Both the position numbers and the translations under genes were made by a program. The notes below the pieces were generated by a model. That model worked only from the letters and a program-made list of their open reading frames with translations. It did no database searches and was not told the DNA's origin. Positions 4,101-64,000 of a stretch of DNA of 64,000 bases are shown here, piece after piece. Source of the stretch: Haliotis cracherodii (lineage: Eukaryota); NCBI RefSeq assembly GCF_022045235.1, contig NW_027266319.1:37634001-37698000 (forward strand), written 5' to 3'. The first letter of the stretch is position 1, and each line of letters begins with the position of its first letter.

Positions 4101-4982
4101 CGAGGAAATGCTTGTTCTACGAATAACCGTTCTTACACTGCTAATGAGTGTGGTAGCGTCTTTGTCAACACCCATGTTTTGTATACTAGGTTACTTTACC
4201 GGTGTGCATATTGGCGTTGTATTTTAACTATCTTCTTGTGGTATTATTAGCTTTTACTTATATGTGCAAGAGAAAGCGATCAACATCGAGAAAATGTTTA
4301 TGTGTGGGCTCAGCTTTCACACTACAATTACAAAATGTGCAAACTTACAGTACTACAGTCACACATGTCATAGATGTCAGATGCCATCCGACCCGTGAAG
4401 ATCCGGGGTTAAATAGGTCTTCAGCAACCCATGCTTGCCGTAAAAGGCGACTATGCTTGTCGTAAGAGGCGACTAACGGGATCGAGTGGTCAGGCTCGCT
4501 GACTTGGTTGATGCATGTCATAGTATCCCAATTGCATGGATCGACGCTTATGATGTCAATCACTGGATTGTCTGGTCCAGACTCGATTATTTTCAGACCG
4601 CCGTCATATAGCTACAATATTGCTGAATGCGGCGTTAAACAACAAACAAACATTAGCCATCCAACATGTGATAGTGGTTAAGTACGTTTCGAATCGTTAC
4701 CCTTCACGATATATCACACGTCAGTCGCCTCAGTCTCTTATAGTTTAACTGATCTTAAAGTTTACATGTTTTAGAGCATAGGCGAGTTATTTTACATTAC
4801 GTTTATGTTCAATTTACTAAGTTACTTTGCATGTCAGATTGATGAAGCAACTGGATGACTTGAAAACCATGATGTCTGAGGAACACTATGTGGGACTTGA
4901 TGAGAGGACAACTGACCAAGCAACATGCAATACCTACGAAAAATGTGAAAATGTTTCACCTTACCACATTTCCGTTAAATAG
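146..4982 (+). CDS. Gene A (5' end outside window): EGF-repeat, single-pass membrane receptor with tyrosine-motif tail; exons 146-283, 818-955, 3515-3614, 4838-4982
   Basis: Canonical AG/GT exons with compatible phases. Two 138-nt EGF exons (CSDGWFGTDCDKQCRCLNNTEVCDKNTGQCLGGCAPGYTGIGCQT), a TM exon (VTEEVSNWGLPVAITLGTLLIFTVIAATIYIKR) and a last exon (LMKQLDDLKTMMSEEHYVGLDERTTDQATCNTYEKCENVSPYHISVK*). Exon structure parallels genes B and C. Confidence 0.8.
2030..2700 (-). mobile_element. Decayed Tc1-family transposase fragment in gene A intron
   Basis: Fragments GSGRTKHTTPRHD..LRNRF, MWAGI, FELQDDNARAHRA; multiple stops and frameshifts. Confidence 0.8.
3141..3420 (+). mobile_element. tRNA-derived SINE family B
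   Basis: A box (TGGCCCAGTCG) and B box (GGTTCGAACCC), tail ...GGCATAAAACCCAATTCACTCACT. Other copies at 11550 (-), 12406 and 35030. Confidence 0.85.
3862..4140. mobile_element. Palindromic MITE-like element
   Basis: ~50-bp inverted repeats at 3890-3941 and 4061-4111 (GCATTTCCTCGATCAAGAC...GTACCTCTGTGTAC). Confidence 0.6.
4391..4650 (+). mobile_element. SINE family A (core GCTTGTCGTAAGAGGCGACTAA, (CAAA)n tail)
   Basis: Dispersed repeat. Further full or partial copies near 9290/10090, 15337, 15988, 22380, 23390, 25010, 46950, 51740 (-) and 58950 (-). Confidence 0.85.
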
Positions 4983-14990: not shown

Positions 14991-15336
14991 GTGTTTTGTA
15001 ATTATCCTAGGATCCAGTCAAGTGTTTAGAAATTTGTTTTTGTTTTCAAATATTTTGAGAAAGATATTTAATTGAAAAGTTGTGTTGAAGAAGTATTTTA
15101 TACTTGGATTTTCTGAGGTTTGGCAAACAGGAAGTCTCGTCCATGCAAGCGTCCAAGGAACCAGTTTAGCGCAGCCCCGAGTAGATTTGTTTCTCAAATT
15201 CGGAAACTCAGTCTTTCACACTTAAGTTTATAAAAATGTTGCGTTCCTTTTTGTTCAGGTTTCAACATCAAAACTCAAGTGAGAAAGTGTGCATTTAACA
15301 CTAACACCACGGCAAGTGATACCTTTGTATTCAAGA

Positions 15337-15600
15337 CCCTTGAAGATCCGGGGTAGATTAGGTCTTCAGCAACCCTTGCTTGCCGTAAAAGGCGGCTATG
15401 CTTGTCGTGAGAGGCGACTCACGTGATCGGGTGGTCAGGCTCGCTGACTTGGTTGATGCATGTCATCGTATCCCAATTCCGTTTATCGATGCTCATGATG
15501 TCAGTCACTGGATTGTCCTGTCCTGACTTGATTAATTACAAACCGCCGTCATATAGCTGTAATATTGCTTAGTGCTGCATTTAACAACCATTAAAAAAAC
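15337..15600 (+). mobile_element. SINE family A
   Basis: Match to 4391-4650. Confidence 0.85.
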
Positions 15601-19744: not shown

Positions 19745-19904
19745 TTATATTCGGCCCCGGTGGACTTCCCCTGCGTTGGCATAAGGACTGGTATTGTCAA
19801 CGTGTTCGTATATGTTTTCCACAACTGGATCCCTGGTGTTCTCATCAAGAGATATGTAGTTATCTTCAGGCTTCTTTTGCAAGGCATCCAGTTGACGCTT
19901 CAGT
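19745..19904 (-). CDS. Gene B last exon, cytoplasmic tail
   Basis: LKRQLDALQKKPEDNYISLDENTRDPVVENIYEHVDNTSPYANAGEVHRGRI*; acceptor TTTCAG; homologous to 58009-58156. Confidence 0.85.
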
Positions 19905-22900
19905 CTGAAATGTACAGCAATAAGCTAGTAAGGCTAATCATTTCAAGATGATTAGGTACATGTATATCCCTTTACGAATATGAAATAGGCACCACTTGTT
20001 GACGGTACACACACGCTATTGTTTTCACTGAAATGCAATTGATCATGCGTTCATCACCCTCTTGCATACTACTGCCATCAATGTAAGGAGATCACGTAAG
20101 TCTCTGTGATTTGTATCCAATCCTAATAGTCCCTTGAATAAAATATGTTTAAATAAATCGATACAATTATCGCCAGCTGTACAATATACATTCGTATACA
20201 TGTATGTTTGTACCAACTGAAACATTGCTGGTATACTTGACACATATGTACATACCCCTATACGATTCGATTATGTGGATCAAACAACGAAAGTTCTGCG
20301 TGAAATATGAAATGTGCTTCATGTCATAATACTGCATTGTAATGGACATAGACTAATGATAATGAACGACGAATCATCGATGGTAATAATATGATAATGG
20401 TAATTATATGATATGGTGGTTATAATCCGTCAGTTGGAGTCTCTAATGCACAATTAGCAAAGAATCGGTTAATGTTGCTCAATATTATGAATCCTCTTTT
20501 CATGTTCATGATACTTTATCTTTAACACATTACACGATCCCTACCTTCTGATGTAAAAGATGGACGTCAACAGAGCGATGGCAGCCAAGACGAGAAGTGT
20601 ACCGAGTGTTGCTACAACTGGCGCTTCACGGATTAAACATCCTGGTGTTGCCGCAAACACTGTACAACATTGTTTTTAAAACAAATAAGTGGTTCATATT
20701 CCTTATTCTTCTGAAAGTATGGGTTCGAATCCGGGACGGAACTGAATAAAGTACTAGCTATAGAGTACAATCGCAAATATAACATTTGTTCATTTGAAAA
20801 CTTTCTAAAAGGCATTGTGTATTCATTTCTGTCGACCATGGGACAAATATTCATACTGGTTATGAGTCTCCAAATGGCGATTTGAGGGAGTCTATCCAAA
20901 TCCTCTTGCAACAATGAAAGCAGGGAAAACACTACTGCACGATAAGCAGAATCAATCAGATTGACAGAAATAATGGTCCCTCCATTTGATATGTTCAAAT
21001 CTGATTGTTAGCAAATCCATCTCCGCCACATGCCTCGGACAGCTCTCTGGGCAGGAAAACGTAGAAGACACCCGCATCTGTCATATATGCCATGGAAGTT
21101 GAAACACCGTGCTTTCCGCCAATAACAACCACGATACACTGTCGTCAATGTAAGAATAGCGAGCGCGACGGAAGCGCAAACACCTGCTGTAATTTTTGTC
21201 AGCGGAGTTTATCCTTCGCCTGAGCGATCTTGTATCACCATTTTATAATGCAAATATAATCAGATGTGGAAAATATATGTGGAAACAGTGTCTGTTATAC
21301 AAACGTAACTATATTATATAATACTTTTTTCATACAACATGAACATGAATGTATTGCATAATGAACAATAATCCTGTATATACTCACAACTCAAGCACGT
21401 ATCAGTGGTCCACCTTTGTGCACATCCTCTCGGACATGTCCCTGTGGTCTTGACACATACATCTCCATTTAGGCAGTTTCCGCATTGGGAGGAGCAGTTG
21501 ATACCGTAGGAGCCGTCTTGACAAGCTGTCCATGTACATAGTTACTTTAATATTTTATAACTATTCTGATAAGAAGCACGGCCTAATAGTCCATACTCAC
21601 TCACTCACTCACTCACTCACTCACTCATAAACTACTGAATGTAGTTGAAACAATTGGGGGCAAACTTAGCCCCATAACCTCCGTCTGGGGATCTTGTGGA
21701 CATAACATGAAGCTGTAGACAGTGACACGAACACCCGTCAGTGAACACAAACTCTCAGTGAGTGTAAGCTTCAGTGATGGTGTGAGTGATGAGGGTTAAA
21801 AATATGTACAGTTTGTGTGCATATTGTTTCAGTATATTGTCCATTACGCTTGACATGGAAAAATGTCTACCATTTTATGCGCTCAGCGTCCTATGTACAT
21901 GTAGGTGGATTTAATTATTGCTGAAAGTTTCTACTATTTGGCAATACAAGTGTTCGTGGTATTTATATTGGAGATAAGCGCTAAAACGCTCGTTTCAGAA
22001 CTAAAATAAGAATTATGCAATCAACAGTTATAATACATGAAAATGCCAAACACAGTAAGTGTAGCTTCGTTCTTAATTATGCATGGAATAACAGTTCAGC
22101 TACCTTAGAACAGTCTCAAAAGGGGCACAGGTCGTAGAAAGGGTAAGAACTTGTACTGAAGTCCAAGATTAATTACTTTGATTCTTGAAATAATGTGTAA
22201 CAAAATGCGTATCTGTTTCCATGAAATAACCCTCCATACAGATACACAGCTTCATCGCAACATGTTGTTTTTATTGCACCTCGACTTAACTATGCCATCT
22301 GAGATGGCAGATTGAGTTAGCAATGATATTTGTACCGGAATGTATTGCATAATGCACACTAACCCTGTACATACCAACAACTCTCATGATGCCAATCACT
22401 GGATTGTCCTGTCCAATTGCTGGAATATTGCTGAGTGCGGCGTTAAACAACAAACAAACAAACATACTCATAACTCAAGCACGTATCAGTTGTCCACCCA
22501 GATTCACATCCTCTTGGACATGTCCCTGTGGTCTTGACACAAACATCTCCATTTAGGCAGTTTCCGCACTGGAAGGAGCAGTTGATACCACAGGAGCCGT
22601 CTTGACAAGCTGTCCGTGTACATTGTTTCTTTCATTAGTACTTATTAATTGTATTAAGAAGAGGTTCGGCATGAGGCCATATTCGCTCACTCACTTACCA
22701 GTAGATAGTTGAAATGGTTGGAAAAAAGTACCTACCCTGTGAACACAGATCTGGTAACCATCCAAACAGGCATCCTCGAGGACATTTCCCTGTTACCTTG
22801 TCACAGACAGCAGTGTCCAGACAATGGCCACAATGAGACGCACAATTGGCACCATAACGTCCGTCTGGGCATGCTGTAGACAGTAACATGAACACCTAGC

Positions 22901-25900: not shown

Positions 25901-28900
25901 CAAGAACGCTTTAAAATGGTACTTTTTGAGAAGGTGTATTTACACATGAGTACATAGGTCAGCTATCTTTCTAACATTCTGACATGGTGTCACGGGTAGT
26001 GGGAAACGAAACAATTAACTCATCGATCACGATTAATTACTTATATTCTTGACTCATTCAAAATAAAACAAACGCGTTTCATTTTTTTTAAACAATTGAC
26101 AAAATAACCCTCCATAGATAAAAAATTATATTTTATTTCATCGCAACATGTTGTATATCTTGTACTGCTTAGAGTCAACTGTGTCGTTTCTTGGAAATTG
26201 TATTGCATGTTTTTGTGACACACTGGTTAGTGTATGTTTTACTTAATGGTGCGTATTCTGAAATAGATATTATCATGTTTGTTTAGCCGTTGTAAACAAG
26301 TACTTGTTCAGTGTTCAGTCGAGTGAAAAATCCATCCGATGAATTTCTGATATTGAACTTATATAGTTCTAATAAGTTGTCGGCAGCCATTGTTATATGC
26401 ATCAATGTATGGGGACTTCCCGGAATGCCGGGAAATAATGTAACATTGATATATGTTTCGTGAGTACTAGTATGGAAACTCGAATTTTTTTACTTCTGAA
26501 ACTGTCAGTAATAAATGAAAAAGAATGTGTCTGTCCTTGTTATTTTCTATTTGAAATATGTATCCTTGACACGATCCTCATGCTTGTAACAACAATGGCA
26601 TGGTACATCTACAATTACGTGCGGGTATAGCGGGAGTAAAACGATATATAAGCTATCGATTGTTCGATGTAATCACAAGTAACGGGCTTGTTTCAAAAAT
26701 CTTGTTAATTTTGGGCTGTCATTTCATTTTGACCAGTCAGAAAGAAGCATTCTTCTGTGTCATGGTAGCTCTGTCGTACTTTACTTCATTACTTCGGATA
26801 ATACTCCCGAATTCAAATTCAAGAAGTAGCGTGTATTAGGTAGTCATATATATCATCATAATAATATTAAATATTGCAACATCAACATTTTGTAAATCAA
26901 GGGCATGGGAATGCTTAGGCACATAAGTAATGCGTTGGAAGGGTGGGCCAGGATATATTCTAACGCAAGAAGTGTACTCTAACAATCTGACACATGTATC
27001 TTAAATATCGAATCATACACACTGTCCATTTATAACATTGTATAGCGATTTTAACATGTTCACCTTGTCACACTTCTTGCCATAGAGTCTTTCGGCGATT
27101 GTTTTGTCACTCTCATTCTTTATGTATTGATCTAAATTGGGACTTCTTGCGCAGAATGTTTTTCTCCCTGATTTTGCAAAGATGTTACTCCCTTTTCACC
27201 CAATGATAATTCAAATCAAAGTATCTGCATTTAACATGTGGAAACTTAGACATAAAATTGGTCATTTTTCACATATACACTGAAAACTCATTCCTCACGT
27301 GTCTGACAATCTATGCCAGTTTTCCCGGGAGCACAGCCACCAAGACACTGTCCTGTGATCTTGTCACAGACTTTTGTTTTCTTAAGACACTGACACTGCT
27401 TATCACAATCGGTACCAAACCAGCCGTCACTGCAAACTAAATCGATGAAAGGTTACAGAAACCAATTTCAAAATCGATATAAACGCTTCACAAAGTGAAA
27501 CGAATATATGTTACAGGAAACAAGTATAATCAGTGATTAAGTCTAATGACTGAAAATTTCAGTGATTATGTCTAATAACTGATTCACTCGGTGGTTATGT
27601 CTAAATACTGAAATCTTCAGTAATTAGACATAATCACTGAAATGAACCAAGGGATTTTATACTTGTTTACTGAAAGCATATTCCTGCCTTGTTTTTATAA
27701 TGTGTGCTAGTTTTGAAATTAGATTAGCTATCAAAGTAAATACAACCTCCTGTTACCAGATACCTTACACAAAAATCACAGAAATAAGCTTAAACAGTTC
27801 AATCTTTTATTTCATAAAATGGTATGACGTGAATGGTATGACAAATAGCTGTCTGATGGACACTCAGGAATGTTTGTTTGCACATGACAGACTTGAATGA
27901 CATCTAGATTTACATTGCATCTTGGCCTTAAAACATTTGCAGCGATTGGTCTGACACCGTTTAGTTTCAACACAATTACACCTTACAAAGCCTTGACCAC
28001 CACAGACTGAGTCAAGTTGAACCGCTTGACGCAAAGAGAGTGTTCAATCGGTATTGAAATCGTCAGCATTATACAGTTTGGTTTGGTTCAGTAATTAGAC
28101 ATAACCACCGAGTGAATCAGTTATTAGACTTAATCACTGATTATACTTGTTTCCTGTAACATATGTTTTGATTTCTATGGACAACTAGCGAAGCCTTCTC
28201 AAATGTTGTTACAACACATGATTCTGTTTGTTTACAGGAGATTGGCTTACGACAGGATTATGAAGCCTTCTCACAAGTTATTATAAAAAGGCAGGGATAT
28301 GCTTTCAGTAAACAAGTATAAAATCCCTTGGTTCATTTCAGTGATTATGTCTAATTACTGAAGATTTCAGTTATTAGACATAATCACTGAAGTCAAATTA
28401 AAAACTTCACATTTTAAAAAGTAATCCCATATATGATATACAACGGCGAATGTATCAGAGAAGGTAATTTTTAAACATTAATGTCCAAAGAAGGATTTTA
28501 ATTAACGGTGGTAACCATAATTTGTTCCCAGCACCTACGGTATTCGGTAAAACGTCAACAGTTTAAATCATAAGTCCCAAGCACCAGAATCTCATGGAAC
28601 ACAAGTTCAGTAGCGTGTATGGCCACCATGTGCATTGACAACTGCCAAACAACGCCTCCGCATGGACCTTGTGATGCTTGTGAACACATGATTGGGAAAA
28701 CGACGCCATTGTTGCTGCAAAATGGTGTCAAGATCTTGCAAATTCTGTGGTTGGTTCTGGAGAGTGTGCAGACTTCTGCCAAGAGCATCCCAGACGTGTT
28801 CGATGGGATTGAGGTCGGGAGACCTTGACGGCCAGTCCATGACGTTGACTCCCGCATCCTGAAGGAAATTCCTTGTCAAAATTGCCGTGTGGGGTCTGGC

Positions 28901-31900
28901 ATTGTCGTGTTGGAAGATCAAACCGGGTCCATGTGCTGCCATAAAAGTTCTGGTGCAAGTACCTGGTTGCGGTAAGCAGCAGCGTTGAGGTTGCCACGGG
29001 TGACAAGAAGCCTGGAACGTGCATTGCCACAGAAAGCACCCCACACCATGACACTTCCGCCTCGAAATCTGTCAACTTCCTGTACACAACACTGGGCGTA
29101 ACGTTCATGAAGGCGCCTCCACATCCTCGCCCTACCATCAGCAAATCGAAGATTAAATCGGGATTCATCACTGAAGACGACTTGATTCCAATTCCTCTGA
29201 ATCCATCGTAAGTGTCGCTGTGCCCACAATTGACCTTGACGTCTGTGTAATTGAGTCAGAATCGGCCCGCAGTATGGCCGTCGTGCTTGAAGTTGAGCAG
29301 TTCTCAGACGGTTTCGAACAGTTTGCGCACTCAGTCTACCCCTAAACAGTTCATTTCTGGTTGATGTAGCCGTCAAAAATCGGTTACGGAGGTGACGTAA
29401 GACAATCTGACGATCCTCTGCATGTGACGTCACACGTGGTCGACCTGGCCGAGGGCGATCAGCCGTGGTACCCGTTTGCTGTAGACGTGTCTGTAAATCA
29501 TAAGCAGTCCGTCGACTACAACCCATCGTCCTTGCGACTTCAGCTACGGACGTTCCCGTCTGCAACATGCCGATGGCACGTTCACGTTGCACACGTGAAA
29601 GGCGTGGCATGACAAATGGCCGTAAAGACTTTGTTTTCTTGTGTTTTTCATTTTTTGTTAATGACTGCTAACAAGTAAACACGTGCGGTATTATGGCCAC
29701 GTGACCAGTTGCACGTGAAAAAACACTTTTGACACTGTAGTGCTGTGCACATGATTTTGATCGATTCACCTGCACAAAAACGTGTGTTATCTGAAGACAA
29801 TATGTGGCCATTACTGTTTAAATACACAATAAGGGCCCACAATGATAACTGGTCAAAATGTTAAGATTTTAGGATTGTGAAGTTTTTAATTTGGTATATA
29901 TATTCTCACACCTGGTACAAACACCTGTGAGATGTCACTGACTAAAACTGCTGGATATCTATCATCATCAAATACAGACATGCTTTTGCTGTTTAAGAAT
30001 AACGATCAACGTAAAAAAAAACACGCAAATCTCTACGCGTATATAATATCCTAAACTAACGTCGAAACCGATGGTATACCTCAAGTTACGCAATTATATG
30101 AATACTAGTAATCATCAGTTCAAATATGGAGTACTTACCGAATATTTGCACCTCACACAAAGTAAGGTATATATCGGAGGCATCTGGCACCCGTATAGTG
30201 ACGTTGTTTCCTGCCAGCGGCTGACGGCAGGTGACGTTAGCTAGAGGAGGAGGACGTTCAGTTGATGACCAGTTGTAGCACATCTGGCTACCCACAAGCA
30301 CCTCCATTCCGTTATTTCTGCTGCTATCTGTACAGAATGAATGTGAAATGTTTAAAGTTTTAACTGTAGAGTTATGTGTGTTTATGGTGATTGAATTGGC
30401 GACCGATGTTGTTAGCTACATTCGCATATCCAGTTAATCACAGCGCGGAACAAGGGGCAAGTATTATATCGGTGTTGTTGTTTCTTCACAACACTGTTAG
30501 TTGGTTGACTTCAAATCAAATTAAGAATGAATTATCATTTTCCTATAATGGTTGGGGGACATATAAGCTTATAACTTTGTTCACCTTCGCCAGTTCACTT
30601 AGGTTACTTAATCATGACGTCATGGTTTGATTATTCCTATAATAAGTGTCTGAAACAAACACACGCACTATAATTCATCCTTGATAACAAACCGATTTCC
30701 CTTTTTCAAAACTAAAACCGATTCATACTTTAAATGAAGAATGTATCTTTCATGAATGAATGCTCCGTTCTTTGATCAGTTGGAGAAATATGTGTCTTAC
30801 AAACATTTGTACCGCATTTAGAATTGTAAATGCATATTACTTTAAATGTTATGGCATACTGGACACTTGCCTTGTACACAAACTGTATATGTGCACATTG
30901 TACTCACAATCCCTGCGTAGATAGAGTCGGATGTGTTGTATCCGGTCTGTGCTGGAGGTGTTCAGGTAAACAGTCCAAGTATGGTGTTGATCTCCAGCGG
31001 CTGTATGTGTACATGTCAGTGGTTTAGCATAGAAGGATGTGGTAGCTCTGCCATCTACTCCATAGTGTGCTTGGAATGCATGGCTTAGATTACTTGTCTT
31101 CTCCGTATTTTCAGTGTATGTGGAACTCTGTGTGGAAGACCTTCTCAAGGCAACATTTTCTGTAAAATCAACAATCAGGGAAGTATCATTGATGGGATAA
31201 ATGCGGTCAAACAAAGCTTGAGGTTAAAGAAATATATAAAATATTTCACTTCGAAATTAATTATTAATCCGAATGTATATTGCTTTCCTGTTTACAGACA
31301 CATTTCTACAAATATACGAATATATATGGCCTGCTGTAGAAGGTTATTTACATCGTTTTTCATGGAAGTAGCATTTCGATGTTTTATACAAAACTGTGGT
31401 ATCCTACATCGACCAGAGGTCGGGTTTCCTTTACAAAACATAGTATGTGTGAAGGTTTGTAAAACTGAAAACCTACTGATTGAAAATAACACACTCACGT
31501 TTCTGACAGTACGGACCAAACCACCCTTCCTGGCATCTGTCGGGACTGCCGACCTGGCTACAGGGAGTGGAGGGAAACACGGTGCAGGCAGTAGTGGTGT
31601 TACAGTGACAACTAGCATCTGTTCGATTGTGGACAGAAGAGAATACCTTCACTTTGCCTTTCATGACGGGTACGAGGAGAATGGTTTCATTTTATATGTT
31701 GTAACCATTAGAGAGTTCCTTATGAACATATTATGGACCTTTTTTTATGACGAATCATGTCAACTCCAAAGGTGTTTATATCAAATCAGTATAAAACATG
31801 TTCATTCTTTATACTGTAATACTGAACGGTCACACAACAGGGAGTGGAATACCTGTTTTTTTAAGCTGTTTGCTATGAACTTTGAACGAGCTAAACAGTT

Positions 31901-45079: not shown

Positions 45080-45790
45080 CCTAGACGTGTTCAGTGGGGA
45101 AGGGAAGGGGCTGGGCTCATTGCTGGCCATTGCATTCTATAGACATTGTTCAATCTGAGTGGAGGTGAGTATGGATGTTGTCTTCCTGAAAGACGAACGA
45201 TCGACCCGCAGGCCTTCCAAACGGGACAACGAAGGGTGTCAGTTCGTTGTCCCGATACAACTTTGCAGTGACCCTTCCTTGTCCAATATGGAGTAGGGTT
45301 CGCACAGTCATAGTGATGCCACTCAAAACCATGACCGATCCACTGCCAAATCTGTCTTGAGGTCTCAGGCTGACATTGGCTTGACGTTCATTTCGACGTA
45401 GCCAGACACGACCACGCCTATCAAGGAAGGGCAAAGTGAATCGGGATCAGATGAAAACATGACACATGATCAGCGACGATGACACCAGTTGTGTACACCA
45501 TTGACGTATGTTGGCAATATCACGATTTGTAAGGGGCGGAACAACACTGGCCGTCGAGCATGGAGAAGAGCTGCACGGCTTCTCGTCTAACCCGTGATCC
45601 GGAACTCGTACTCCAGCTGTTCGATTCGCCGTTTAAGCTCGGTTTCGTTGAGCCTGGTTTCGGATCAGTCGATCCTATTCTCTTTTCGTTGACCTGTGAC
45701 GCCCTGAACGAGGTCGATCGTCAACATTGTTTGGTGCCTAGTCTGCTGGCCACAAACCGTGAAACATTGAACGTATTGGCTACTGCACAA
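45080..45790 (-). mobile_element. Decayed Tc1 transposase
   Basis: DRFGSGSVMV, FVFQEDN and a WPAMSP..PFP.EHV remnant. Confidence 0.8.
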
Positions 45791-45807
45791 ACACTAAATG
45801 GAATCAA

Positions 45808-46014
45808 AGGGAAGAGAATATATGGATGTCAACTTCTTTATTATGAGGAACACAACGTTTCGGAGTATATGCTTACTCCTTCATCGGGAGGATCCTTTTC
45901 ACCTGATGAAGGAGTAAGCATATACTCCTAAATGTTGTATTCCTCATAATAGAGAAGTTGACATCCATATATTCTCTTCCTTATGTGTATCCCTTCTAAA
46001 TGCCTTTCAAAGAG
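45808..46014. mobile_element. Palindromic Penelope-type insertion with two hammerhead-ribozyme-like motifs
   Basis: Arms 45810-45888 and 45902-45980. Plus arm CTGATGA-A-GGAGTA agcata TACTCC-TAAA; minus arm CCGATGA-A-GGAGTA agcata TACTCC-GAAAC. Flanking repeat CT(A/G)AATGGAATCAA at 45794-45807 and 46015-46028. Confidence 0.7.
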
Positions 46015-50160: not shown

Positions 50161-51680
50161 AACTAAGCGGCAAAAGAAAGTATAGGTTGGCAATTTGTAA
50201 TTTTCCTAAAAACAGCGATAACGAGTGGAAAGTGGGTACTGGGAATATGGCTGCCCAGGAACAGGTACCAAACAACAGCTCACCTGAACGCGCCACCGTT
50301 GAAGGCGCTCGTGCGGTGACAAAAAAATGATGAAACAGGTTTCCCGTCTATGGCATAAACTGCACGTGCATGTTAGCTGTATCAATGCGTTCGTCTGCAG
50401 GGTATAACCACACGCGATGAAAGCCCACAAGAGAAATGCCACGACTGTCACTGGAGCAGAGAGAGAGCGCCATCGGTATGGCCGAAATGGGGGCAACACA
50501 GGTCAAAATTGCCAGAAGGTTTGGTTGTACACCACTGACAGTAGCCAGGCTGATTCAACGGTACAGGCAGACAGGGAGGAAACAGGAGAGACCAAGAACC
50601 GGACGACCAACTTGAAGACGGCCAGATACGGCTCATTCACCTGCGAAACAGATTCGTAACGGAGACGGTGACGACAGCAACAGCATTGGGACATCCCCTT
50701 AGCCAACGTACAGTACTACGACGACTTCGTGTTGCTGGAATCCGAGCGTATCGTCCTTTCCGAGGAATGGTACTGACGGCTCAGCATCGACGCCTGAGAC
50801 TGCGATGGGCGAGGTAGGTACGACGCTGGCAAGTGAGAAATTGGCGTCGAGTGCTGTTTACTGATGAAAGTCGGTTTAACTTGTTTCGAAATGACGGCAC
50901 AGAACGAGTTTATCGACGCAGAGAGGAACGTTTGGCTCCGGCGTGTATTCGAGAGATCCATCCATTCGGCGGGGGAAGTGTCATGGTGTGGGGCGGGATT
51001 TATGGAGATCAGAAGACTGATTTGGTGATTATACAGGGAAACCTGAACGCTGATCATGAGACCAAGTGTTGCAGCCAGTTGTTCTTCCGTTCTTACAAAA
51101 CCAACAGCAGGGGACATTGTTTCCAACACGACAATGCCAGGCCCATACTGCAAGACTGACTCGGAACTTTCAAAACTAGCAGAGCGTTTGTCCTGGCCGG
51201 CCCACTCACCTGATATGAATCCTATTGAACATCTGTAGGACTATTTTAACAGACAGATTAGGGCACACCATCAGTCTCCCGTCAACAGACAAGAATTGCA
51301 GCAGGCCCCGAGAAACGAGTGGCAACGGATTCCATTCCACGTCATCAGAAGACTGACGTCATCGATGAGGCTGCGTATCACAGCATCCATTGGGGCAGCT
51401 GAAGGTCATACACGCTATTGAAGGCAACTGTGTCGACCATGAACTTGTGGTGTGTCTGACAATTTTTTGATGACATTTCAGACAACTTTTGAAAATGAAA
51501 TTTCTTACCCCACCATTGTTTACCTTGAGCGTACATTACCTGTCATTGCACAATTTCATTCAAACTGTGGTTGATTTGTTACCCATTCCTAGATAATATT
51601 ATAATTCACAACAAAACCTCTTCTTGTTATTTTTTTATCGATCATAGAACTCGACTTATACTTTCTTTTACCGCCCAGTT
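50161..51680 (+). mobile_element. Full-length decayed Tc1 transposon
   Basis: TA-flanked; TIRs AACTAAGCGGCAAAAGAAAGTATAG / CTTATACTTTCTTTTACCGCCCAGTT. Transposase relic MPRLSLEQRESAIGM..LFTDESRF..FQHDNARP..SPDMNPIEHL..GHTRY*. Confidence 0.93.
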
Positions 51681-57067: not shown

Positions 57068-57670
57068 ATCAATCAATCAATATTTTATTCAGTGTGAAGG
57101 CCATAGGAGCATATACAAATACAAGTTTATGGTAGTGGCAAAAGACATAATCTTAAATATTGCTTAACAAATACTTTCTTCTTTCATACGCATGATCAAT
57201 AAACAGGCATAGTAATTTTTATTTGTTTTCTATCGTCTGTAGCAATTTTTTTTAAATGTATGCGTATTTACATTAGTAATACGTGTCTTTGGTAGATATT
57301 TAGTTATTATCAAAAGTAGCACATACAAGTAGAAAGTGATATTCGTCTATTATCCATCGATCACGTAAAGCACAGTTTGTCATGCATATATCGATTTTTT
57401 TGCCACCAACCTTCATTATTTCCCAACCGTAAAAGTCCCCCTCTAAACTTCACTAAAATATTTAAAAGCTTTAATTCGCCAATTGCATAAAGATGTTTTT
57501 CTGGTTGTAACAGACTTTTATATTCCATATAAAGATTATATCTTAAACCGTTATTAATAGTAGATATCCAATTTTGATGAATCGTATCAATAGCACAATC
57601 TTCCAACATACTTATTATACATTTTAATCTCCAACTGTTTATCACAGCCAAAAAAACCAAAACCATGAGA
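57068..57670 (-). mobile_element. LINE 3' fragment with (ATTG)n tail
   Basis: Y..YKSLLQPEKHL..LVKFRGGLLRL..NEG followed by a Cys/His remnant; microsatellite tail at about 57068-57082. Confidence 0.7.
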
Positions 57671-58008
57671 ACATTGTAGATATCTAATATTCAGTTATTA
57701 TTCAGGTACTTTGAATCTATTGAATCTATGTATATGTAGAATGCAATACCAGAGCTACTGACATCGGAAACGTGTATCTTTTCCGTATATTGTCAACATA
57801 AGATCTACACACATGCAGGGATGGTAACATAAGTCATGATTCCATTTCGATGTAGAAAGAGGGTGAGAGTTGTGGAAAGAAGCTCTATAAACATTTCGAT
57901 GTAGAAAGAGGGTGAGAGTTGTGGAAAGAAGCTCTATAAACATTCAAGTTGTGCAAACAGTGACAACGGTCTGTCGCGTTCATTCGGCTGGTATTGTCAA
58001 CTCCAGCC

Positions 58009-61000
58009 CTAGTGGACTTCCCCTGCCTGTGCATAAGGGCTGGTATTTTCAATTTCTTCATATGTGCTTTCCGTAGCTGGATCCCTGGTCTTCTCATCCA
58101 GAGATATGTAGTTATCTTCGGGCTTCTTTTGTGAAGCAGACAGTTGACGCTTCAGTCTGAAATATACAGCAATAAGCTAGTAACGCTATCAATTTCAAGA
58201 TGATTTGTTGCATTTATATCACTTTACGATTATTGAATAGGTAGCAATAGGTAGCAACACAACCCTTATTAGTTTCACTGAAATGCAACCGATCATATGT
58301 AAATCCTGCTCCTGTATATTTTGAACAAAACTGCAACCAGTGTATTCAATATCAATGTAAGGAGACGGTGTGGTAAGTGACTTTTAATCAATCATAATAT
58401 TTTTCAATCAATCAATACAATTTTCGCCAACTACACAATATATATTCGTATATGTTTGTACCAACTGATACCTTCCTAAAATCTTGACATGAATTTACAT
58501 ATTTGTATATGATTTTATCGTGTAGATCTAAACAATGAAGGTCGGGTTGAAATTTGAAACAAGGTTGTCAAGTTATTCATAGGAGAACACAAGAAAAATA
58601 ATATTCTTCGACGTATCGACGGCAATATGATAAATAGTATAATTCAGTATAAGTCTCTAATACACAATTAGCTAAGAAGCAGTTAATGTTGCTCAATATT
58701 ATGAATCCTCTTTTTATGTTCATGATATTTTATCTTTAACACATTACACGATCCCTACCTTCTGATGTAAAAGATGGACGTCAACAGAGCGATGACAGCC
58801 AAGACGAGAAGTGTACCGAATGTTGCTACAACTGGTGCTTCCCGGCTTAAACATCCTGGTGTTGCCGGACACACTGTACAACATTGTTATTAAAACAAAT
58901 ATGGTGTTCATATTCTTTAATATTTTGTGTAGTTCTTACAGCTTTAATCGTGTGTTTGTTTGTCTGTTGTATTCCAGCTATATGACGGCAGACTGTAAAT
59001 AATCGAGTATGGGCCAAACACTCCAGCGATTGACATCATGAGCATCGATCTACGCCTTTGAGATACGATGACATTCGTCAAACAAGTCTGCGAGCCTGAC
59101 CACCCGATCCCGTTAGTCGCCTCTTACGACAAGCATGGGTTGCTGAAGACCGATTCTTACCCGGATCTTCACGGGTACTGTTCTTTTGGTGATATATGCG
59201 TCTTTTATCACACAAATTAACTGTTCCTGTAATCTCTTATTGAAAGGGAAAAGTACATGATGTATGTCATATATCTTGTAATGAACTTGTGCTGGAGTCC
59301 TTAGAGTTGCCTTGATATGTCTTGCGAAGTTCCTTTCAAAGAGTAGTACGAGAATCAACAAATTATTTTACAATATTGATCTACTTATCAAGCATCAGGA
59401 TGACTGAGGAAAATTTGTAAATAGTTGACTTCAAAATTAAAAAAGAGAATGAAAACGTCTATCTTTTCTTCCTATGGCTTGTTGCGTGTTCCTACCTTGG
59501 CACAGGGGCTTCATGAAGTTGCCCTGACATCCTTCAGCACACTCCCCACTGGACTTCTCACAGGTCCGGGCGTCTTTACACTGACCACATCGCGACATGC
59601 AGTCATCCCCGTACATTCCATCAACGCATTCTGGCGAGTAGACGACATATACTTTTCATCTATTCACTTTACTTTATGATATACTGGCAAGACTATAGCG
59701 ACCAGGGCAAGGAGAGTTGTTTTGTGCAAAAAGAGAGAACAGTAACATCCATCACATTGCATCCCACCTTTACAAGTGGGTTCTTGAAACCCTGGCTGAC
59801 ATCCCTGGTCGCATGTTCCATTGATCTTGTTACAAGGCAGGTTTCCTTTACATTGACCACACTCGGACTGACAGTGGTGTCCATGACGACCGTCACTGCA
59901 AGCTGTAAGAAACAATATCTGAAATCCTCAAGGACATTTCAATGACATCTTTTCACAGACATCAGTGCCCAGACAGTGACCCAGTGAGACGGGCAGATGA
60001 TGTCCGTCGAGGCATGTGGCAGTGAAATGAATATTCATCCAATGTTTCAAATCCTCCGGATACGTCGTTTGATATCTGGCCCCGAGCGCTACGCGGGGAA
60101 TTTGTCCGTGTATTTCTATCTACTCCCGTCCTTAAGCAATTAAGATGTTCGTGATTTAAAACTTTCTCTTTTCTTCTATGTGGACTCCAGTATTGCATGT
60201 AGTTGCAAAGACCTTGTAATTACATTTATGGTGACGTGGGCAAGACTTTGGATAAAAAAGTAGTTTGTGGAAGATGTAATACCCAAAATCAACACTCATC
60301 ACATAGCCCTTGTAAATGCACTGAACAGTTCTAACAACAGTTTGAATGTGACACATCAGTCAGATGAGTAATTATTTAGAATCAAGAAAGTACCTAAATT
60401 GTGCAGTGCTGCTTTCAAAAGAAGTCACTTCTTTATCCATAATCAGAATCCATATTTCTTTACCACATTAGGAAGCTATTTTACATGTCGTTATTGGAAA
60501 AATAAACTGTGTTCATGTCACCGGGTCGTTATTTTTCTGGTGTCTCGGTCTCGTGCCGCTCCACGGTTTTATTTCCGACACCGCTCGGCTAATTCCGGCG
60601 GTCGTAGGTGTACAGTGTCATTACATTCTGTGTTAGGAATTTAGTGGCCCAACCATTTCATTCTCTTGTGATCTCATGAGGGGTACTCAAAGTACGTGAT
60701 CTAGACTACAAGTTGTCGGACTCTCGTTTTTGTGGAAGTCTCGGTGGCTGAGTGGGTTAGATCGCTGACTTTGTGTGCTGGAGACTAGGTGCCTCACTCT
60801 GGCAAGTGTGGGTTCGTAAGTATGATTTTCAAACATTAGGGGAATTTATATGTACACTGAGATATTTCTCATGTATTTACGATCACTTCTGCCTCCTCAG
60901 TAATTGTACATAGCTTGTTGCAAATCTTTAATGCTACCGTTGGATAGCTTATGTTCGGCGCTTTATTTTGATACTTACATCTTCAGTATAAATATAGTAG

Positions 61001-63989
61001 TTAGTTTGCAATTTGAGTTGTCCCCATGTTTAGAAACAAACGTTGGCTAAGTGCCCTAGTATATTCGTTTGGACCGTTGGTACGGATCGGTGTGCTAGCT
61101 TGGGGTCACGGTGGAAACTCAGGTTTCGTTAGTAAGTGATTTCGGGGCCCTTTTTTATCTTCTACTGACTCACTCTGGTTGTATTGAGATAAACGTAATT
61201 ACTAGGGTTTCCCATACTCGTATTTTCTACTACTCCGTGGATAACCAACATCGCCTTGATTGTCTAGCTACAAGTTACTTAGTAGCTGGTGTTTCCAATA
61301 CTCCGTTTTCTAGTAATCCCAGGATAACCAAGCTTGGCCCCTGATTGTCTAGTTATTTGAGAATTTTGGTATTTCCTTGTTCAGTCAAAATGACTCAGTC
61401 GATCAGACCAGTTTGATATTCAGACGTACTCGTCTATTTTGTAGTCGTGTAAGTTTATTTCCCGTTATTTAACCCAGGCGAGGTTTTTCACTCATTAGAG
61501 TGTTAAGTTGATTGACTCAGGTGTTAATTTGACGCAGCCGACTTAATTGGCTGTTTAATTATCTGGTCGGTGTCTTGTCAAAATGTTTTAACTGATCTCA
61601 TTTTATTGCTGCAATACAGTTGCTTAGCTGTGCCACATGTGTTTTTTCTCTGAATTAATTAATCAGTGATCTTTGTCAGCGCAGATTGGGTTTATCTGAT
61701 CTATTATTGTCATCTATTAGTACATTTAGCTGTAATTGATAAACGTGTGAAGCTATTACCACGTTTTCATTATTAATTTATTATTATTTAATGACACTCC
61801 TGATCATTGGAGCAAAGCTCCGTGGCAATTCACATTTCACATTATTCAAGAGAGTTGTACAGTTATGAATATAAGTAGTTATTCTGTGACGGAACTTTGT
61901 ACGGCGTCGATCTTACGTCAACTGTGTAACAGCTATGTGTCCTATATTCATGATCAGTGACATCTGTATCTATTGTTTGTTAGAAGCCCTTTAAAAGTTG
62001 ATTCGTGGTTGCAATGTAAAATGTGGCAATGCAGCACACCAGATAGTGAGTGAGTGAGTTAATGCTTTACGTCACATCGGCAATATTTCAGCCATATCGT
62101 GACGACACACCAGATAGTGGAGTTATACAGGTATAAATATACCGCCAGAACATAGAACGACTGCGATTCTCCGACAATGGTACAACGACTATTGCTCCTA
62201 TATTTTTGTCATCTACATCTATAGTTCGTGAAAACCCTTTATAAAAAGGGTCCGGCAATGCAGACCATTCTCTACCTAAAAGGCGAGTTGGCATGAAATA
62301 AGAGCAGATGCTCATAGTGCATGTGTGGCAAAGGTGAGACCCCTGGAAGGGTGTTAAAGGCTGTGTAATGATGTCTGGCCTGACGAAACCAGTTGGTGTC
62401 TTGGCTGATGACTCAAGGAGATTTGACTTAAAGAAAGTTCAAATGCCTAAATTGCATACGGGGATGGTTCCATTCCATTGGAGTAGCAGTTCAGTTTCTC
62501 TGACGTGTGTCGTATGGTGGCAATGAGAGCTTGATGTTGCGTACTATGGCTGGAGTGTCAGCTGCCATGTCATGAGCGAGTGGGCAACCATCGGAAGAGT
62601 GACAAGATGGCATGCCACTAATAGACAGACTACAGGCTTTGTCATGTGTTTTGCATATTCGTGTATGTGTTGTTCTTTGTACCAGTGTCATTGGCCATAT
62701 CACTAGAACTTGAAACCAAAGAAGTAAAACAATTCTGCTTAAATGCATCTGATAATTCACTGCCTTGGAAACAAAGTTGTATCCTTCGACAATACTGAAA
62801 GCTATTCCTGACATTGTATTTGTGTTGGCATTTAACATATGTTAGTATATAGGATATGACATGAGATGAGTTGGTTCAGTACTGTTTGGAATTAGATTCA
62901 TGAGCTCTGGCTATCTATGTGGCTATGATGCATACTAGTATATTCTTCGTCTGTATCATCTTTATCATATCTGAAATGAACCAAGGGTGTGTAAATACAA
63001 TGACGAAAAGTTAACGCTACATGTACCTAATTCTCTCCTTGGGCATTCCTGCGGACCGTTTGTGAAAAAGACGGTGGATCTTAGTGGGTTGAACCTGTAG
63101 ATCTCTCGCTACTCGTGTTGCCGTAACACCAGCTTCAATAATGCCCAATACTCGATGACAATTGTTTATGACTAATCCGAGCATGGTGCATTCAAAGAAC
63201 TAGCTGACGTGTGTTGCAACGTTTCGCTTTTATGAGTACCTTCAACACCCAAAATTGCATATTGCACATTTAAAACATGCATGTTGTTCTCGGAAGGTGC
63301 TCAGAAAGACACGTGTTGGCTAATCTGACGCATGGATGTGAAAAGATGTTATTCTATCAAAGTGTGTGTTTTGTTGTGCAAATAAATAACCATTATTAGA
63401 TATTAATGAGGTTGAGAGTTGCAATATAACACTTGCTTATCTTTTGGAACTTAGTGGAACTTGTAAAGGGATGCACGTGAGCGTCTAGGAGGACACAAAT
63501 AAGATATCACAATAGAGTATGTGGGTCACATTCTTTATCATATTGTCCGAAAGCGTTACCGATAATGAAGACAGAGGTCTTATTTGAGGCATCAAATATT
63601 CATTGTACATCGATGTAATGACTGATAAGATTAATTAAATCTTTACAAGGAAAATGGCAAATTAAATTATTTACCAGAATGATCATTTTTCTCTCATCAA
63701 GTATCCCCAAAAAGTAGTCTGAATTCGTTTAAGTAACAACAATGTGAACAAAAAGGTTGAAACACTGTCTGTTATGCAAAAGTAACCACATTATATTATA
63801 CTTTATAAATAAAACCTGTAAATAAATTAATGCAGAATGCAATATACTCACAACTCAAGCACGTATCAGTGGTCCACCCTGGTGCACATCCTCTCGGACA
63901 TGTTCCTGTGGTCTTGACACATACATCTCCATTTTGGCAGTTTCCGCACTGGGAGGAGCAGTTGATACCATAGGAGCCGTCTTGACAAG
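58009..63989 (-). CDS. Gene C (5' end outside window): EGF-repeat receptor with ITAM-like tail; exons 63852-63989, 59768-59902, 59496-59630, 58759-58873, 58009-58156
   Basis: EGF exons CQDGSYGINCSSQCGNC.., CSDGRHGHHCQSECGQC.., CVDGMYGDDCMSRCGQC... TM exon VCPATPGCLSREAPVVATFGTLLVLAVIALLTSIFYIRR. Tail LKRQLSASQKKPEDNYISLDEKTRDPATESTYEEIENTSPYAQAGEVH*. Canonical splice sites. Confidence 0.88.
58945..59175 (-). mobile_element. SINE family A in gene C intron
   Basis: Reverse complement of the family A consensus. Confidence 0.85.
59920..60018 (-). pseudogene. Decayed EGF exon relic in gene C
   Basis: CLDGH..GHCLGTDVCEK..KCP*G, with deletions and a stop; same type as gene B CPDGRYG exons. Confidence 0.6.
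63040..63457 (-). mobile_element. Tc1 5' remnant
   Basis: MLGL..RVLGIIEAGVTATRVARDL resembles the N-terminal HTH of the other Tc1 copies. Confidence 0.55.
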
Positions 63990-64000
63990 CTGATGATATA

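What the first reader, a model, noticed from the sequence alone, without database searches (positions are those of the whole stretch)
58009..58156. Gene C tail has a full ITAM-like motif ending in YEEI
Seen: EDN-YISL-X12-YEEI, then SPYAQ. Known: the relaxed ITAM consensus is YxxL/I-X6-12-YxxL/I, Draper uses an X11 spacer, and pYEEI is the classic optimal Src-family SH2 ligand. STYEEI also fits the loose ITIM pattern SxYxxI. Inference: C is the strongest signalling member.
Basis: partly seen in the sequence, partly recalled or inferred. Interest (0 to 1): 0.8.

Follow-up and report, generated by a model that had tools for sequence, protein, structure and literature searches.

The report
Abalone lectin-EGF receptor tyrosine-motif tail
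The stretch is the last coding exon of a black-abalone membrane receptor (fucose-lectin-like head, EGF stalk) whose short inner tail carries a family-conserved pair of tyrosine docking motifs; the eye-catching 'YEEI' is a one-residue variant seen only in this assembly, so this copy is an ordinary family member, not a specially strong signaller.

Summary
Observation confirmed. On the minus strand, 58012-58156 (stop 58009-58011) reads RLKRQLSASQKKPEDNYISLDEKTRDPATESTYEEIENTSPYAQAGEVH*. Spliced contigs from three exon-only (RNA-like) public runs join the transmembrane exon (58759-58873) to this exon at a GT..AG intron, which fixes the frame and puts the tail in the cytoplasm.

The genome is Haliotis cracherodii. 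Gene C is one of at least 16 tandem paralogues. Annotated relatives have an F-type-lectin-like head, an EGF stalk, one membrane span and a tail of about 50 residues, and NCBI names them "MEGF10/draper-like".

All 24 tails examined, from three Haliotis species, keep Yxx[L/I/V]-X12-Y with no indel in the spacer. Synonymous sites between the older copies are saturated and dN/dS is 0.15-0.4. The bipartite tyrosine motif is therefore constrained and not chance.

The ancestral second motif is YEHI. Only gene C has YEEI, and all four runs laid on it read D at that position (YEDI). C has also lost the family's YxN third site.

Syk-like, SHP2 and Src/CSK-type genes are present in the genome. The ITAM-like reading is plausible but untested, and an endocytic YxxΦ role is a live rival. 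"C is the strongest signalling member" is not supported.

The scan had already noted this family on other DNA of this genome.

The parts
58009..58011 (-). Stop codon (TAG) of gene C. The closest paralogues (gene B, L009) read on for four more residues (RGRI), and L003-L007 also end in RI.
58012..58156 (-). Coding part of the terminal exon: the cytoplasmic tail (R)LKRQLSASQKKPEDNYISLDEKTRDPATESTYEEIENTSPYAQAGEVH. The first base completes the split codon AG|A = Arg.
   Evidence: spliced contigs
58099..58110 (-). First tyrosine motif YISL (Y17..L20), preceded by E-D-N. Y, L and the following D-E-x-T are invariant or nearly invariant in the family.
58051..58062 (-). Second tyrosine motif YEEI (Y33..I36), 12 residues after YISL. 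The family consensus is YEHI. Four public runs read YEDI (58054 T>G).
58033..58035 (-). Third tyrosine (Y42) in SPYAQ. The family consensus is PYxN (Grb2-type), and C lacks the Asn.
57588..58008 (-). Probable 3' UTR. RNA-like coverage continues below the stop codon. It contains a 49-bp tandem duplication at 57843 and 57892.
58157..58758 (-). Intron (GT..AG) between the transmembrane exon and the tail exon. It has no coverage in the three RNA-like runs and is covered in the DNA-like run.
58759..58873 (-). Transmembrane exon: (V)CPATPGCLSREAPVVATFGTLLVLAVIALLTSIFYIR, ending in the split codon AG. The best 19-residue Kyte-Doolittle window scores 2.47, and RRLKR follows on the inner side.
59497..59630 (-). 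EGF-type exon (ECVDGMYGDDCMSRCGQCKDARTCEKSSGECAEGCQGNFMKPLCQ), joined to the upstream EGF exon in RNA-like contigs.
59768..59902 (-). EGF-type exon (ACSDGRHGHHCQSECGQCKGNLPCNKINGTCDQGCQPGFQEPTCK). The joint 59768>59630 is seen in three runs.
59930..60029 (-). Decayed EGF pseudo-exon with an in-frame stop and no RNA-like coverage. It is probably skipped.
63859..63996 (-). Further EGF-type exon of gene C. The gene continues beyond the window in L017: EGF exons at window-equivalent 64849-64986, 65085-65219 and 66085-66228, lectin-like exons at 66442-66621 and 67138-67389, and an N-terminal Cys-rich exon near 69540-69653.
19748..19906 (-). Tail exon of paralogue 'gene B' (YISL-X12-YEHV, PYAN), 85% nucleotide identity to C's tail exon. 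Listed for comparison.
4836..4979 (+). Tail exon of paralogue 'gene A' (YVGL-X12-YEKC, PYHI). Listed for comparison.

Best explanation
The finding is the terminal coding exon of a type-I membrane receptor gene of the black abalone, Haliotis cracherodii. Annotated relatives have a signal peptide, a small Cys-rich module, an F-type-lectin-like domain, a stalk of EGF cassettes, one membrane span and a tail of about 50 residues. Gene C has exons matching all of these except the signal peptide, which was not located.

The tail carries a conserved three-tyrosine module: E-x-x-Y-[IVL]-x-L-D-E-x-T, exactly 12 residues between the two motifs, Y-E-H-I (YEEI in this copy), then eight residues on P-Y-x-N (PYAQ here).

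The most likely mechanism is inferred, not shown. Clustering of the lectin heads by a multivalent glycan ligand would let Src-family kinases phosphorylate the tail tyrosines. The doubly phosphorylated YxxL-X12-YxxI pair would then act as an ITAM-like docking site for a tandem-SH2 kinase of the Syk type, and singly for Src-type SH2 domains. In most paralogues the third site would recruit a Grb2-type adaptor.

Gene C is an expressed, correctly spliced but otherwise ordinary member of this family. Its YEEI is a derived variant of YEHI seen only in the reference assembly and gives no basis for ranking it as the strongest signaller.
For: Shown:
- Frame and topology. RNA-like contigs in runs X1 and X2 join 58759 to 58156 at a GT..AG intron. 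X1, X2 and X3 cover only exons, whereas X18 also covers introns. The hydrophobic 23-residue span has a KD19 of 2.47 and is followed by RRLKR.
- Family. There are 16 tail exons in the genome, 15 of them on the same chromosome; 14 lie within 36.9-37.7 Mb, and L001-L014 share the same cag|A acceptor.
- Conserved residues. E14, Y17, L20, D21, T24 and Y33 are invariant and Y42 is nearly invariant.
- Spacing. All 24 tails from H. cracherodii, H. rubra and H. rufescens keep the X12 spacing, and 20 of 24 have I/L at +3 of the second Tyr.
- Selection. dS between the old clades is saturated, with dN/dS 0.15-0.4.
- Head. The relative P0004 matches the F-type lectin FBP32 (3cqo) at E 2.8e-19, and its stalk matches Tie2 EGF repeats. 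Gene C's own lectin-like exons are 53-61% identical to P0001.
- Reader proteins encoded in the genome. A Syk-like N-SH2 exon has SYK as its best PDB hit (E 3.4e-15). A Syk-like kinase exon lies on the same strand of the same chromosome (SYK E 6.5e-21). There is an SHP2 orthologue (E 2.7e-39) and many SH2-plus-Tyr-kinase loci.

From the literature:
- The ITAM is defined as two YxxL/I motifs 6-12 residues apart (PMC6219719, PMC3576117).
- An oyster receptor with an ITAM binds oyster Syk (PMC6994640).
Against: - There is no biochemical evidence of phosphorylation or SH2 binding.
- X12 is the extreme of the relaxed ITAM range and lies outside the canonical 6-8 residues.
- Both motifs equally fit the YxxΦ sorting signal.
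- Two window paralogues break the I/L rule (B: YEHV; A: YEKC). So does one H. rubra model (YENT).
- A 95%-identical DNA contig in run X18 reads F for Y33 and T for I36. The second site can therefore be lost in a close copy or relative.
- C's tail shows relaxed constraint against its nearest kin (dN/dS 0.4-0.65).
- The tissue of expression is unknown because the runs are coded.
Confidence: 0.5

Rival explanations
1. The tyrosine motifs are mainly sorting signals. YISL and YE[H/E]I are YxxΦ motifs bound unphosphorylated by the AP-2 mu2 subunit, driving constitutive or ligand-induced endocytosis of a lectin-type cargo or scavenger receptor, with no Syk-type signalling.
For: Both motifs fit Y-x-x-bulky-hydrophobic. 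The V at +3 in gene B (YEHV) is acceptable for YxxΦ but not for a strict ITAM. The first motif lies 17 residues from the membrane in a short, acidic and probably unstructured tail. The ectodomain is lectin plus EGF, like scavenger and endocytic receptors; snail relatives are annotated MEGF10/SREC-like (PMC13712769).
Against: A sorting signal needs no second tyrosine at a fixed distance. Yet the 12-residue spacer has no indel in 24 tails, while the juxtamembrane and C-terminal parts do vary in length. A third conserved Tyr in a YxN context, and the invariant acidic residue at -3, point to kinase and SH2 recognition. The two roles are not mutually exclusive.
Confidence: 0.25
2. The tail is inhibitory or switch-like. 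The second motif (S-T-Y-E-E-I) works as an ITIM and recruits the tandem-SH2 phosphatase SHP2, so gene C damps signalling instead of activating it.
For: STYEEI fits [S/I/V/L]xYxx[I/V/L]. An SHP2 orthologue is encoded in the genome. Related heads in snails, and a neighbouring H. rubra gene model, are fused to PTP domains, so phosphatase-linked signalling occurs in this receptor class (PMC12297450).
Against: The -2 residue is not conserved: it is N in 11 of the 24 tails, S in 10, and T or I in the rest. The first motif has D at -2, which does not fit an ITIM. The two-tyrosine arrangement with an upstream acidic residue is the activating pattern.
Confidence: 0.1
3. In gene C specifically the motif is a relic. 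The family module is functional, but this copy is drifting, and its YEEI is a neutral substitution or an assembly- or individual-specific variant of no consequence.
For: - dN/dS of C against its near kin is 0.4-0.65, compared with 0.15-0.4 for the older pairs.
- C has lost the terminal RGRI residues and the Asn of YxN.
- A decayed EGF pseudo-exon sits in the gene at 59930-60029.
- None of the four runs shows YEEI, and one DNA contig has Y33F and I36T.
Against: The exon is transcribed and correctly spliced in three RNA-like runs from two studies. The open frame is intact through every exon examined. All three tyrosines and both +3 hydrophobic residues are kept in the assembly and in the RNA contigs.
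Confidence: 0.15

Closest known systems
ITAM-bearing immunoreceptors and adaptors, especially long-spacer forms (relaxed consensus YxxL/I-x6-12-YxxL/I, as used for Draper in PMC6219719). From my own knowledge, FcgammaRIIA has a 12-residue spacer.
   Same: Two YxxL/I motifs in a short cytoplasmic tail, an acidic residue three positions before the first Tyr, a fixed spacing, and a Syk-family kinase encoded in the genome.
   Different: The spacer of 12 is at the upper limit and outside the canonical 6-8. The motif sits in cis on a lectin-EGF receptor and not on a separate adaptor chain. No phosphorylation or Syk binding has been shown. The tail has no detectable sequence homology outside the genus Haliotis.
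Draper / CED-1 / MEGF10 engulfment receptors (the names NCBI gives these abalone genes)
   Same: Type-I receptor with a stalk of MEGF10/laminin-type EGF repeats and an ITAM-like tyrosine pair in the tail. Draper's ITAM recruits the Syk-like kinase Shark after Src42A phosphorylation (PMC6219719).
   Different: The abalone tail is about 50 residues and has no NPxY motif. Draper's tail also carries an NPxY motif and 10 further tyrosines (PMC6219719), and from my own knowledge it is much longer. The N-terminus is an F-type-lectin-like domain. The tail profile finds no Draper or MEGF10 protein among 1.84 billion representatives. It is therefore not an orthologue and resembles them only in the EGF repeats.
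hemITAM C-type lectin receptors (CLEC-2, Dectin-1; PMC3576117)
   Same: A lectin receptor carrying its own YxxL signalling motif with acidic residues just upstream (here E at -3 and D/E at -2).
   Different: hemITAMs have a single YxxL with three acidic residues at -2 to -4, on type-II C-type lectins. Here there are two YxxL/I motifs, only two acidic residues (P/S/R at -4), type-I topology and an F-type lectin head.
Oyster CgIgR, a mollusc receptor with an ITAM that binds CgSyk (PMC6994640)
   Same: A mollusc single-pass receptor with a cis ITAM (D/ExxYxxL ... YxxL). It shows that ITAM-Syk signalling operates in molluscs.
   Different: It has an Ig-domain head and a shorter spacer, and no sequence relationship to the abalone tail. 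It has been tested functionally, whereas the abalone family has not.
Snail GBD/MEGF single-pass receptors at schistosome-resistance loci (Biomphalaria sudanica SudRes1, PMC12297450; B. glabrata LG5R, PMC13712769)
   Same: Tandem clusters of gastropod receptors with a galactose-binding-like or F-lectin-type head, an EGF stalk and one membrane span. Phosphotyrosine chemistry sits on the inside.
   Different: The snail genes highlighted carry tandem PTP domains inside, not a short tyrosine-motif tail, and neither paper mentions ITAM motifs. Orthology to the abalone genes was not tested here.

Membership tests
ITAM (immunoreceptor tyrosine-based activation motif) | Two YxxL/I motifs | tested here: met
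   YISL and YEEI. In the family, 20 of 24 tails have I/L at +3 of the second Tyr.
ITAM (immunoreceptor tyrosine-based activation motif) | Spacer of 6-12 residues (relaxed); 6-8 in canonical ITAMs | tested here: inconclusive
   The spacer is exactly 12 in all 24 tails. That meets the relaxed rule (PMC6219719, PMC3576117) and fails the canonical 6-8.
ITAM (immunoreceptor tyrosine-based activation motif) | Acidic residue before the first Tyr (D/E-x-x-Y) | tested here: met
   E14 at -3 is invariant in the 11-row alignment.
ITAM (immunoreceptor tyrosine-based activation motif) | Located in the cytoplasmic tail of a membrane receptor or adaptor | tested here: met
   The TM exon is spliced in frame to the tail exon in RNA-like contigs. 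TM hydropathy is 2.47 and RRLKR follows. The full-length relative P0001 has an N-terminal signal-like segment.
ITAM (immunoreceptor tyrosine-based activation motif) | Both tyrosines phosphorylated by Src-family kinases, and bidentate binding by the tandem SH2 domains of Syk/ZAP-70/Shark | not testable with these tools
   Only the presence of candidate partners was shown: Syk-like N-SH2 and kinase exons and many SH2-kinase loci.
ITIM | [S/I/V/L]-x-Y-x-x-[I/V/L], conserved, recruiting SHP-type phosphatases | tested here: inconclusive
   STYEEI fits in gene C. The -2 residue is N in 11 of 24 tails, so the fit is not a family feature. An SHP2 orthologue is present. Binding is not testable.
Optimal Src-family SH2 ligand pYEEI | Y-E-E-I | tested here: inconclusive
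   It is present in the assembly. All four public runs laid on it read YEDI. The family consensus YEHI keeps E+1 and I+3.
hemITAM | Single YxxL preceded by three acidic residues at -2, -3 and -4 (PMC3576117) | tested here: not met
   P-E-D-N-Y has only two acidic residues (-3 and -2), and a second YxxI is present.
Grb2-type site pYxN | Asn at pY+2 (PMC7337045) | tested here: not met
   Gene C has PYAQ. 13 of 24 relatives have PYxN.
Draper/CED-1/MEGF10 | NPxY motif in a long tyrosine-rich tail, and sequence homology of the tail | tested here: not met
   There is no N-P-x-Y in the 49-residue tail. The tail profile found only Haliotis proteins and one bacterial repeat protein taken as spurious, and no Draper or MEGF10.
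Draper/CED-1/MEGF10 | Stalk of MEGF10/laminin-type EGF repeats | tested here: met
   EGF_laminin is the best Pfam hit of one gene C exon, below the cut-off. The stalk of P0004 matches Tie2 EGF repeats at E 4e-8.
F-type lectin domain proteins | FTLD fold and sequence motif in the ectodomain | tested here: inconclusive
   The relative P0004 matches FBP32 (3cqo) at E 2.8e-19 and Pfam F5_F8_type_C_2 at 24.2 bits, below the cut-off of 27.8. Gene C's own lectin-like exons are 53-61% identical to P0001, but alone they hit neither Pfam nor the PDB. Sugar-binding residues were not examined.
YxxΦ endocytic sorting signal | Y-x-x-bulky hydrophobic in a cytoplasmic tail at least about 7 residues from the membrane | tested here: met
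   YISL lies 17 residues and YEEI 33 residues from the membrane. AP-2 binding is not testable.

The most novel reading that the evidence does not exclude
The abalone cluster is a lineage-specific set of glycan-recognition immunoreceptors in which one type of variable F-lectin/EGF head is wired in cis to alternative inner parts: an ITAM-like YxxL-X12-YxxI-X5-YxN tail that recruits Syk and Grb2, tyrosine-free tails, or PTP domains. That would make it an invertebrate counterpart of vertebrate paired activating and inhibitory receptors. The second-motif variants (YEHI, YEEI/YEDI, YEQI, YEHV, YEKC) would tune which SH2 proteins are engaged.
Probability: 0.15. Interest if true: 0.6.

Novelty: new member of a known kind. 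Interest (0 to 1): 0.3.

Why it matters
If the tail module does recruit Syk- and Src-type kinases, abalone would have a tandemly expanded family of lectin receptors that signal directly. That would give a tractable entry into how gastropod haemocytes turn glycan recognition into phagocytic or inflammatory responses. It would be relevant to withering-syndrome and Vibrio disease in an endangered species, and to the related receptor clusters linked to schistosome resistance in snails.

For this particular finding the practical message is smaller. The motif worth testing is the family-wide YxxL-X12-YxxI-X5-YxN module, not the YEEI of gene C.

Tried and rejected
- **Pfam on single exons** of gene C (tail, TM, EGF, lectin-like) gave nothing above the cut-offs.
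- **PDB sequence search** with gene C's lectin-like exon gave no hit at E up to 1.
- **Joined gene model.** All searches used single exons or database proteins. As a result gene C's own annotated protein, if one exists, was not looked up.
- **Word-index search** with the tail region of P0001 found only three proteins of 418-1331 aa. That is too few to add much.
- **Looking for Syk through pairs of SH2 hits** led first to other genes:
  - The C1:59.02 Mb locus is CSK-like (SH3, two similar SH2 exons, a kinase with a short activation loop; identified by eye).
  - The two C2:35.8-35.9 Mb loci look PLC-gamma-like (by eye), and no kinase or PTP motifs were found within 30 kb downstream.
  - The C15 locus is SHP2.
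  - Syk-like exons were finally found on C34. The N-SH2 and kinase exons lie 154-172 kb apart, so I cannot say they are one gene.
- **ARAGORN** on the high-copy intron repeat found no tRNA.
- **TRAF, dileucine, NPxY and ITSM readings** of the conserved residues were considered and dropped because the sequence does not fit those patterns.
The window has no N. The read-laying run used 2,801 letters.
Full report
**What is in the sequence**

The finding lies on the minus strand. Translating 58000-58158 in the right frame gives RLKRQLSASQKKPEDNYISLDEKTRDPATESTYEEIENTSPYAQAGEVH followed by TAG. The span 58009-58156 is the stop codon plus the coding part of one exon.

The exon starts at 58156, behind a tttcag acceptor. 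About 600 bases upstream on the same strand lies a second exon, 58759-58873. It encodes (V)CPATPGCLSREAPVVATFGTLLVLAVIALLTSIFYIR and ends in AG|gtaggg. AG plus the first A of the tail exon makes an Arg codon, so the two exons join in frame.

The hydrophobic stretch scores 2.47 on a 19-residue Kyte-Doolittle window. It is followed by RRLKR, so by the positive-inside rule the tail is cytoplasmic.

**Transcript evidence**

I laid four public runs on 57400-60200. Runs X1, X2 and X3 come from two studies and their organism names are coded. They cover only the predicted exons and a stretch below the stop codon, with zero depth in the introns. Run X18 covers every bin. X1-X3 therefore behave as RNA, although the tool labels that a guess.

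Contigs of 330 and 331 nt in X1 and X2 run from 58873 to 58759 and continue directly at 58156 down to about 57995. This is exactly the predicted GT..AG splice. A second joint, 59768 to 59630, links two EGF exons in all three runs.

The same contigs differ from the window at four places in the tail:
- Two differences are silent.
- 58048 T>G turns E37 into D.
- 58054 T>G turns the second E of YEEI into D.

All four runs, including the DNA-like one, read D at that position, so none shows YEEI.

An 838-nt contig in X18 is about 95% identical across exon and intron. It also reads F for Y33 and T for I36. It may come from another species or from a copy not in this assembly. The best DNA holder has only a fifth of the sampled words. 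The individual that was assembled is therefore probably not among these runs. Whether E or D is a polymorphism or a species difference stays open.

**What the gene is**

A profile of the tail found six true relatives among 1.84 billion representative proteins. The five that carry source names are from Haliotis cracherodii, H. rubra and H. rufescens, and the sixth is an unnamed 51-residue Logan fragment. The seventh listed hit, P0005, is a 1342-aa bacterial repeat protein that I take as spurious. One relative, XP_071083833.1 of H. cracherodii, sits on a contig of 70,419,761 bases. That is the length of the contig holding the window, so the genome is black abalone.

The full-length relative P0001 (761 aa) has these parts in order:
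- a signal-like N-terminus;
- a small Cys-rich module;
- a lectin-like domain;
- about a dozen EGF repeats;
- the membrane span;
- a tail identical to five of the paralogous loci found here.

P0004 residues 67-203 match the striped-bass F-type lectin FBP32 (3cqo, E 2.8e-19), and its stalk matches the Tie2 EGF repeats. NCBI calls these proteins "multiple EGF-like domains protein 10" or "draper-like".

A tblastn of P0001 against the window plus 9 kb beyond its end maps gene C, in 5' to 3' order:
- an N-terminal Cys-rich exon;
- two lectin-like exons, 53-61% identical to P0001;
- EGF exons at window-equivalent 66085, 65085, 64849 and 63859;
- a decayed pseudo-exon at 59930-60029;
- EGF exons at 59768-59902 and 59497-59630;
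- the membrane exon;
- the tail exon.

**Is the motif more than chance?**

The relaxed ITAM pattern alone is weak. It occurs in 14 arbitrary open frames in this window and in 1.3% of 49-residue six-frame tiles. It occurs in 0.55% of shuffles of this tail, and YEEI in 0.22%. Conservation is what decides the matter.

- The genome holds 16 paralogous tail exons, 15 of them on the same chromosome; 14 lie between 36.9 and 37.7 Mb, and L001-L014 share the same cag|A acceptor.
- In an alignment of 11 distinct tails, E14, Y17, L20, D21, T24 and Y33 are invariant and Y42 is nearly so.
- Adding the H. rubra and H. rufescens proteins, all 24 tails have Yxx[L/I/V], exactly twelve residues, then Y. Of these, 20 have I or L at +3 of the second tyrosine.
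- The juxtamembrane and C-terminal parts vary in length, but the spacer never does.
- Synonymous divergence between the two old clades is saturated, while dN/dS is 0.15-0.4.

The two-tyrosine module is therefore under purifying selection in the family.

**Where gene C stands in the family**

The consensus is E-x-x-Y-[IV]-x-L-D-E-x-T ... [ST]-Y-E-H-I ... P-Y-x-N. YEHI occurs in both old clades, so H is the ancestral +2 residue. Gene C's E is derived, and C is the only copy with YEEI.

YEHI keeps Glu+1 and Ile+3. According to the SH2 review PMC7337045, the +3 pocket and the Glu+1 contact carry the Src SH2 specificity, and conservative changes at +1 to +3 cost only about threefold. The family's third site, PYxN, fits the strong Asn+2 requirement of the Grb2 SH2 domain (same review). 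C has PYAQ instead.

C also ends four residues earlier than its closest paralogues (gene B and L009). Against its near kin its dN/dS is 0.4-0.65. None of this supports calling C the strongest signaller. If anything it is a slightly eroded copy, though it is expressed and intact.

**Mechanism**

I commit to the phosphotyrosine-docking (ITAM-like) reading at about 0.5.

Shown here:
- the motif and its cytoplasmic position;
- its constraint in the family;
- the presence in this genome of the needed readers: an exon whose best PDB match is the N-terminal SH2 of SYK, a kinase exon on the same strand of the same chromosome that best matches SYK among single-domain chains, an SHP2 orthologue, and many SH2-plus-tyrosine-kinase loci.

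From the literature:
- the ITAM is defined with a 6-12 residue spacer (PMC6219719, PMC3576117);
- Draper's ITAM binds the Syk-like kinase Shark after Src42A phosphorylation (PMC6219719);
- an oyster ITAM receptor binds oyster Syk (PMC6994640).

Inferred: ligand-driven clustering, phosphorylation, and Syk, Src or Grb2 recruitment.

The main rival is that the motifs are YxxΦ sorting signals for an endocytic lectin receptor. The fixed spacing and the third tyrosine argue against that being the whole story, but the two roles can coexist. An ITIM role is weak because the -2 residue is not conserved.

**Comparison with what is known**

The gene is not a Draper/MEGF10 orthologue. It has no NPxY, a short tail, a lectin head and no tail homology outside Haliotis. 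It fails the hemITAM definition, having two acidic residues rather than three and two tyrosine motifs rather than one.

It resembles the GBD/MEGF single-pass receptors clustered at schistosome-resistance loci in Biomphalaria, which carry PTP domains inside (PMC12297450). One H. rubra gene model (P0011) even runs a tail-type receptor into a PTP-type receptor. Neither snail paper discusses tyrosine motifs.

Earlier notes of this scan (s1-838688, s1-829582) had already described the same family, with ITAM-like tails, elsewhere in this genome, and their follow-ups judged it ordinary. My results agree.

**Verdict**

The ITAM-like mechanism is plausible but untested. The special status claimed for gene C is not supported. 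Interest is modest: a new member of a known kind.

Noticed in passing
window 58904-59185 (intron of gene C): A very high-copy repeat. Summed contig depth is 1e5-1e7 in all four runs. About ten copies or fragments at 70-89% identity lie elsewhere in the window (for example 4391-4619, 10086-10216, 15336-15564, 23391-23464, 25009-25082). ARAGORN finds no tRNA. It is probably a SINE-like element.
   Followed up: partly
window 57843-57940: A 49-bp unit is duplicated in tandem (starts 57843 and 57892) in the probable 3' UTR of gene C.
   Followed up: partly
window 59930-60029 (minus): Decayed EGF cassette with an in-frame stop and no RNA-like coverage. It is a dead exon left inside the stalk array.
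   Followed up: partly
G000:C34:47627111-47627317, 47781386-47781619, 47799581-47799802 (loci L050, L052, L053): Syk-like N-terminal SH2 exon and Syk-like kinase exons on the same strand, 154-172 kb apart. They may be one very large Syk-family gene or two genes.
   Followed up: partly
G000:C1:59016000-59032000 (loci L028, L018): CSK-like gene (SH3, SH2, kinase; recognised by eye) with two similar complete SH2 exons 3.8 kb apart. These may be a duplicated or mutually exclusive exon.
   Followed up: no
G000:C34:58.34-58.52 Mb: Tandem array of at least six copies of SH2 plus tyrosine-kinase exons, suggesting an expanded Src-like kinase cluster.
   Followed up: no
protein P0011 (H. rubra, 1217 aa): This gene model runs a lectin-EGF receptor with the tyrosine-motif tail straight into a second EGF-repeat receptor that ends in PTP domains. 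It is probably two neighbouring genes fused by the annotator. It shows that tail-type and phosphatase-type receptors of this class sit side by side.
   Followed up: no
window 28558-29667, 45094-45928, 50421-51418, 63020-63199: Several Tc1/mariner-type transposase remnants (HTH and DDE-like open frames, recognised by eye) lie in the introns and intergenic DNA of the receptor cluster.
   Followed up: no
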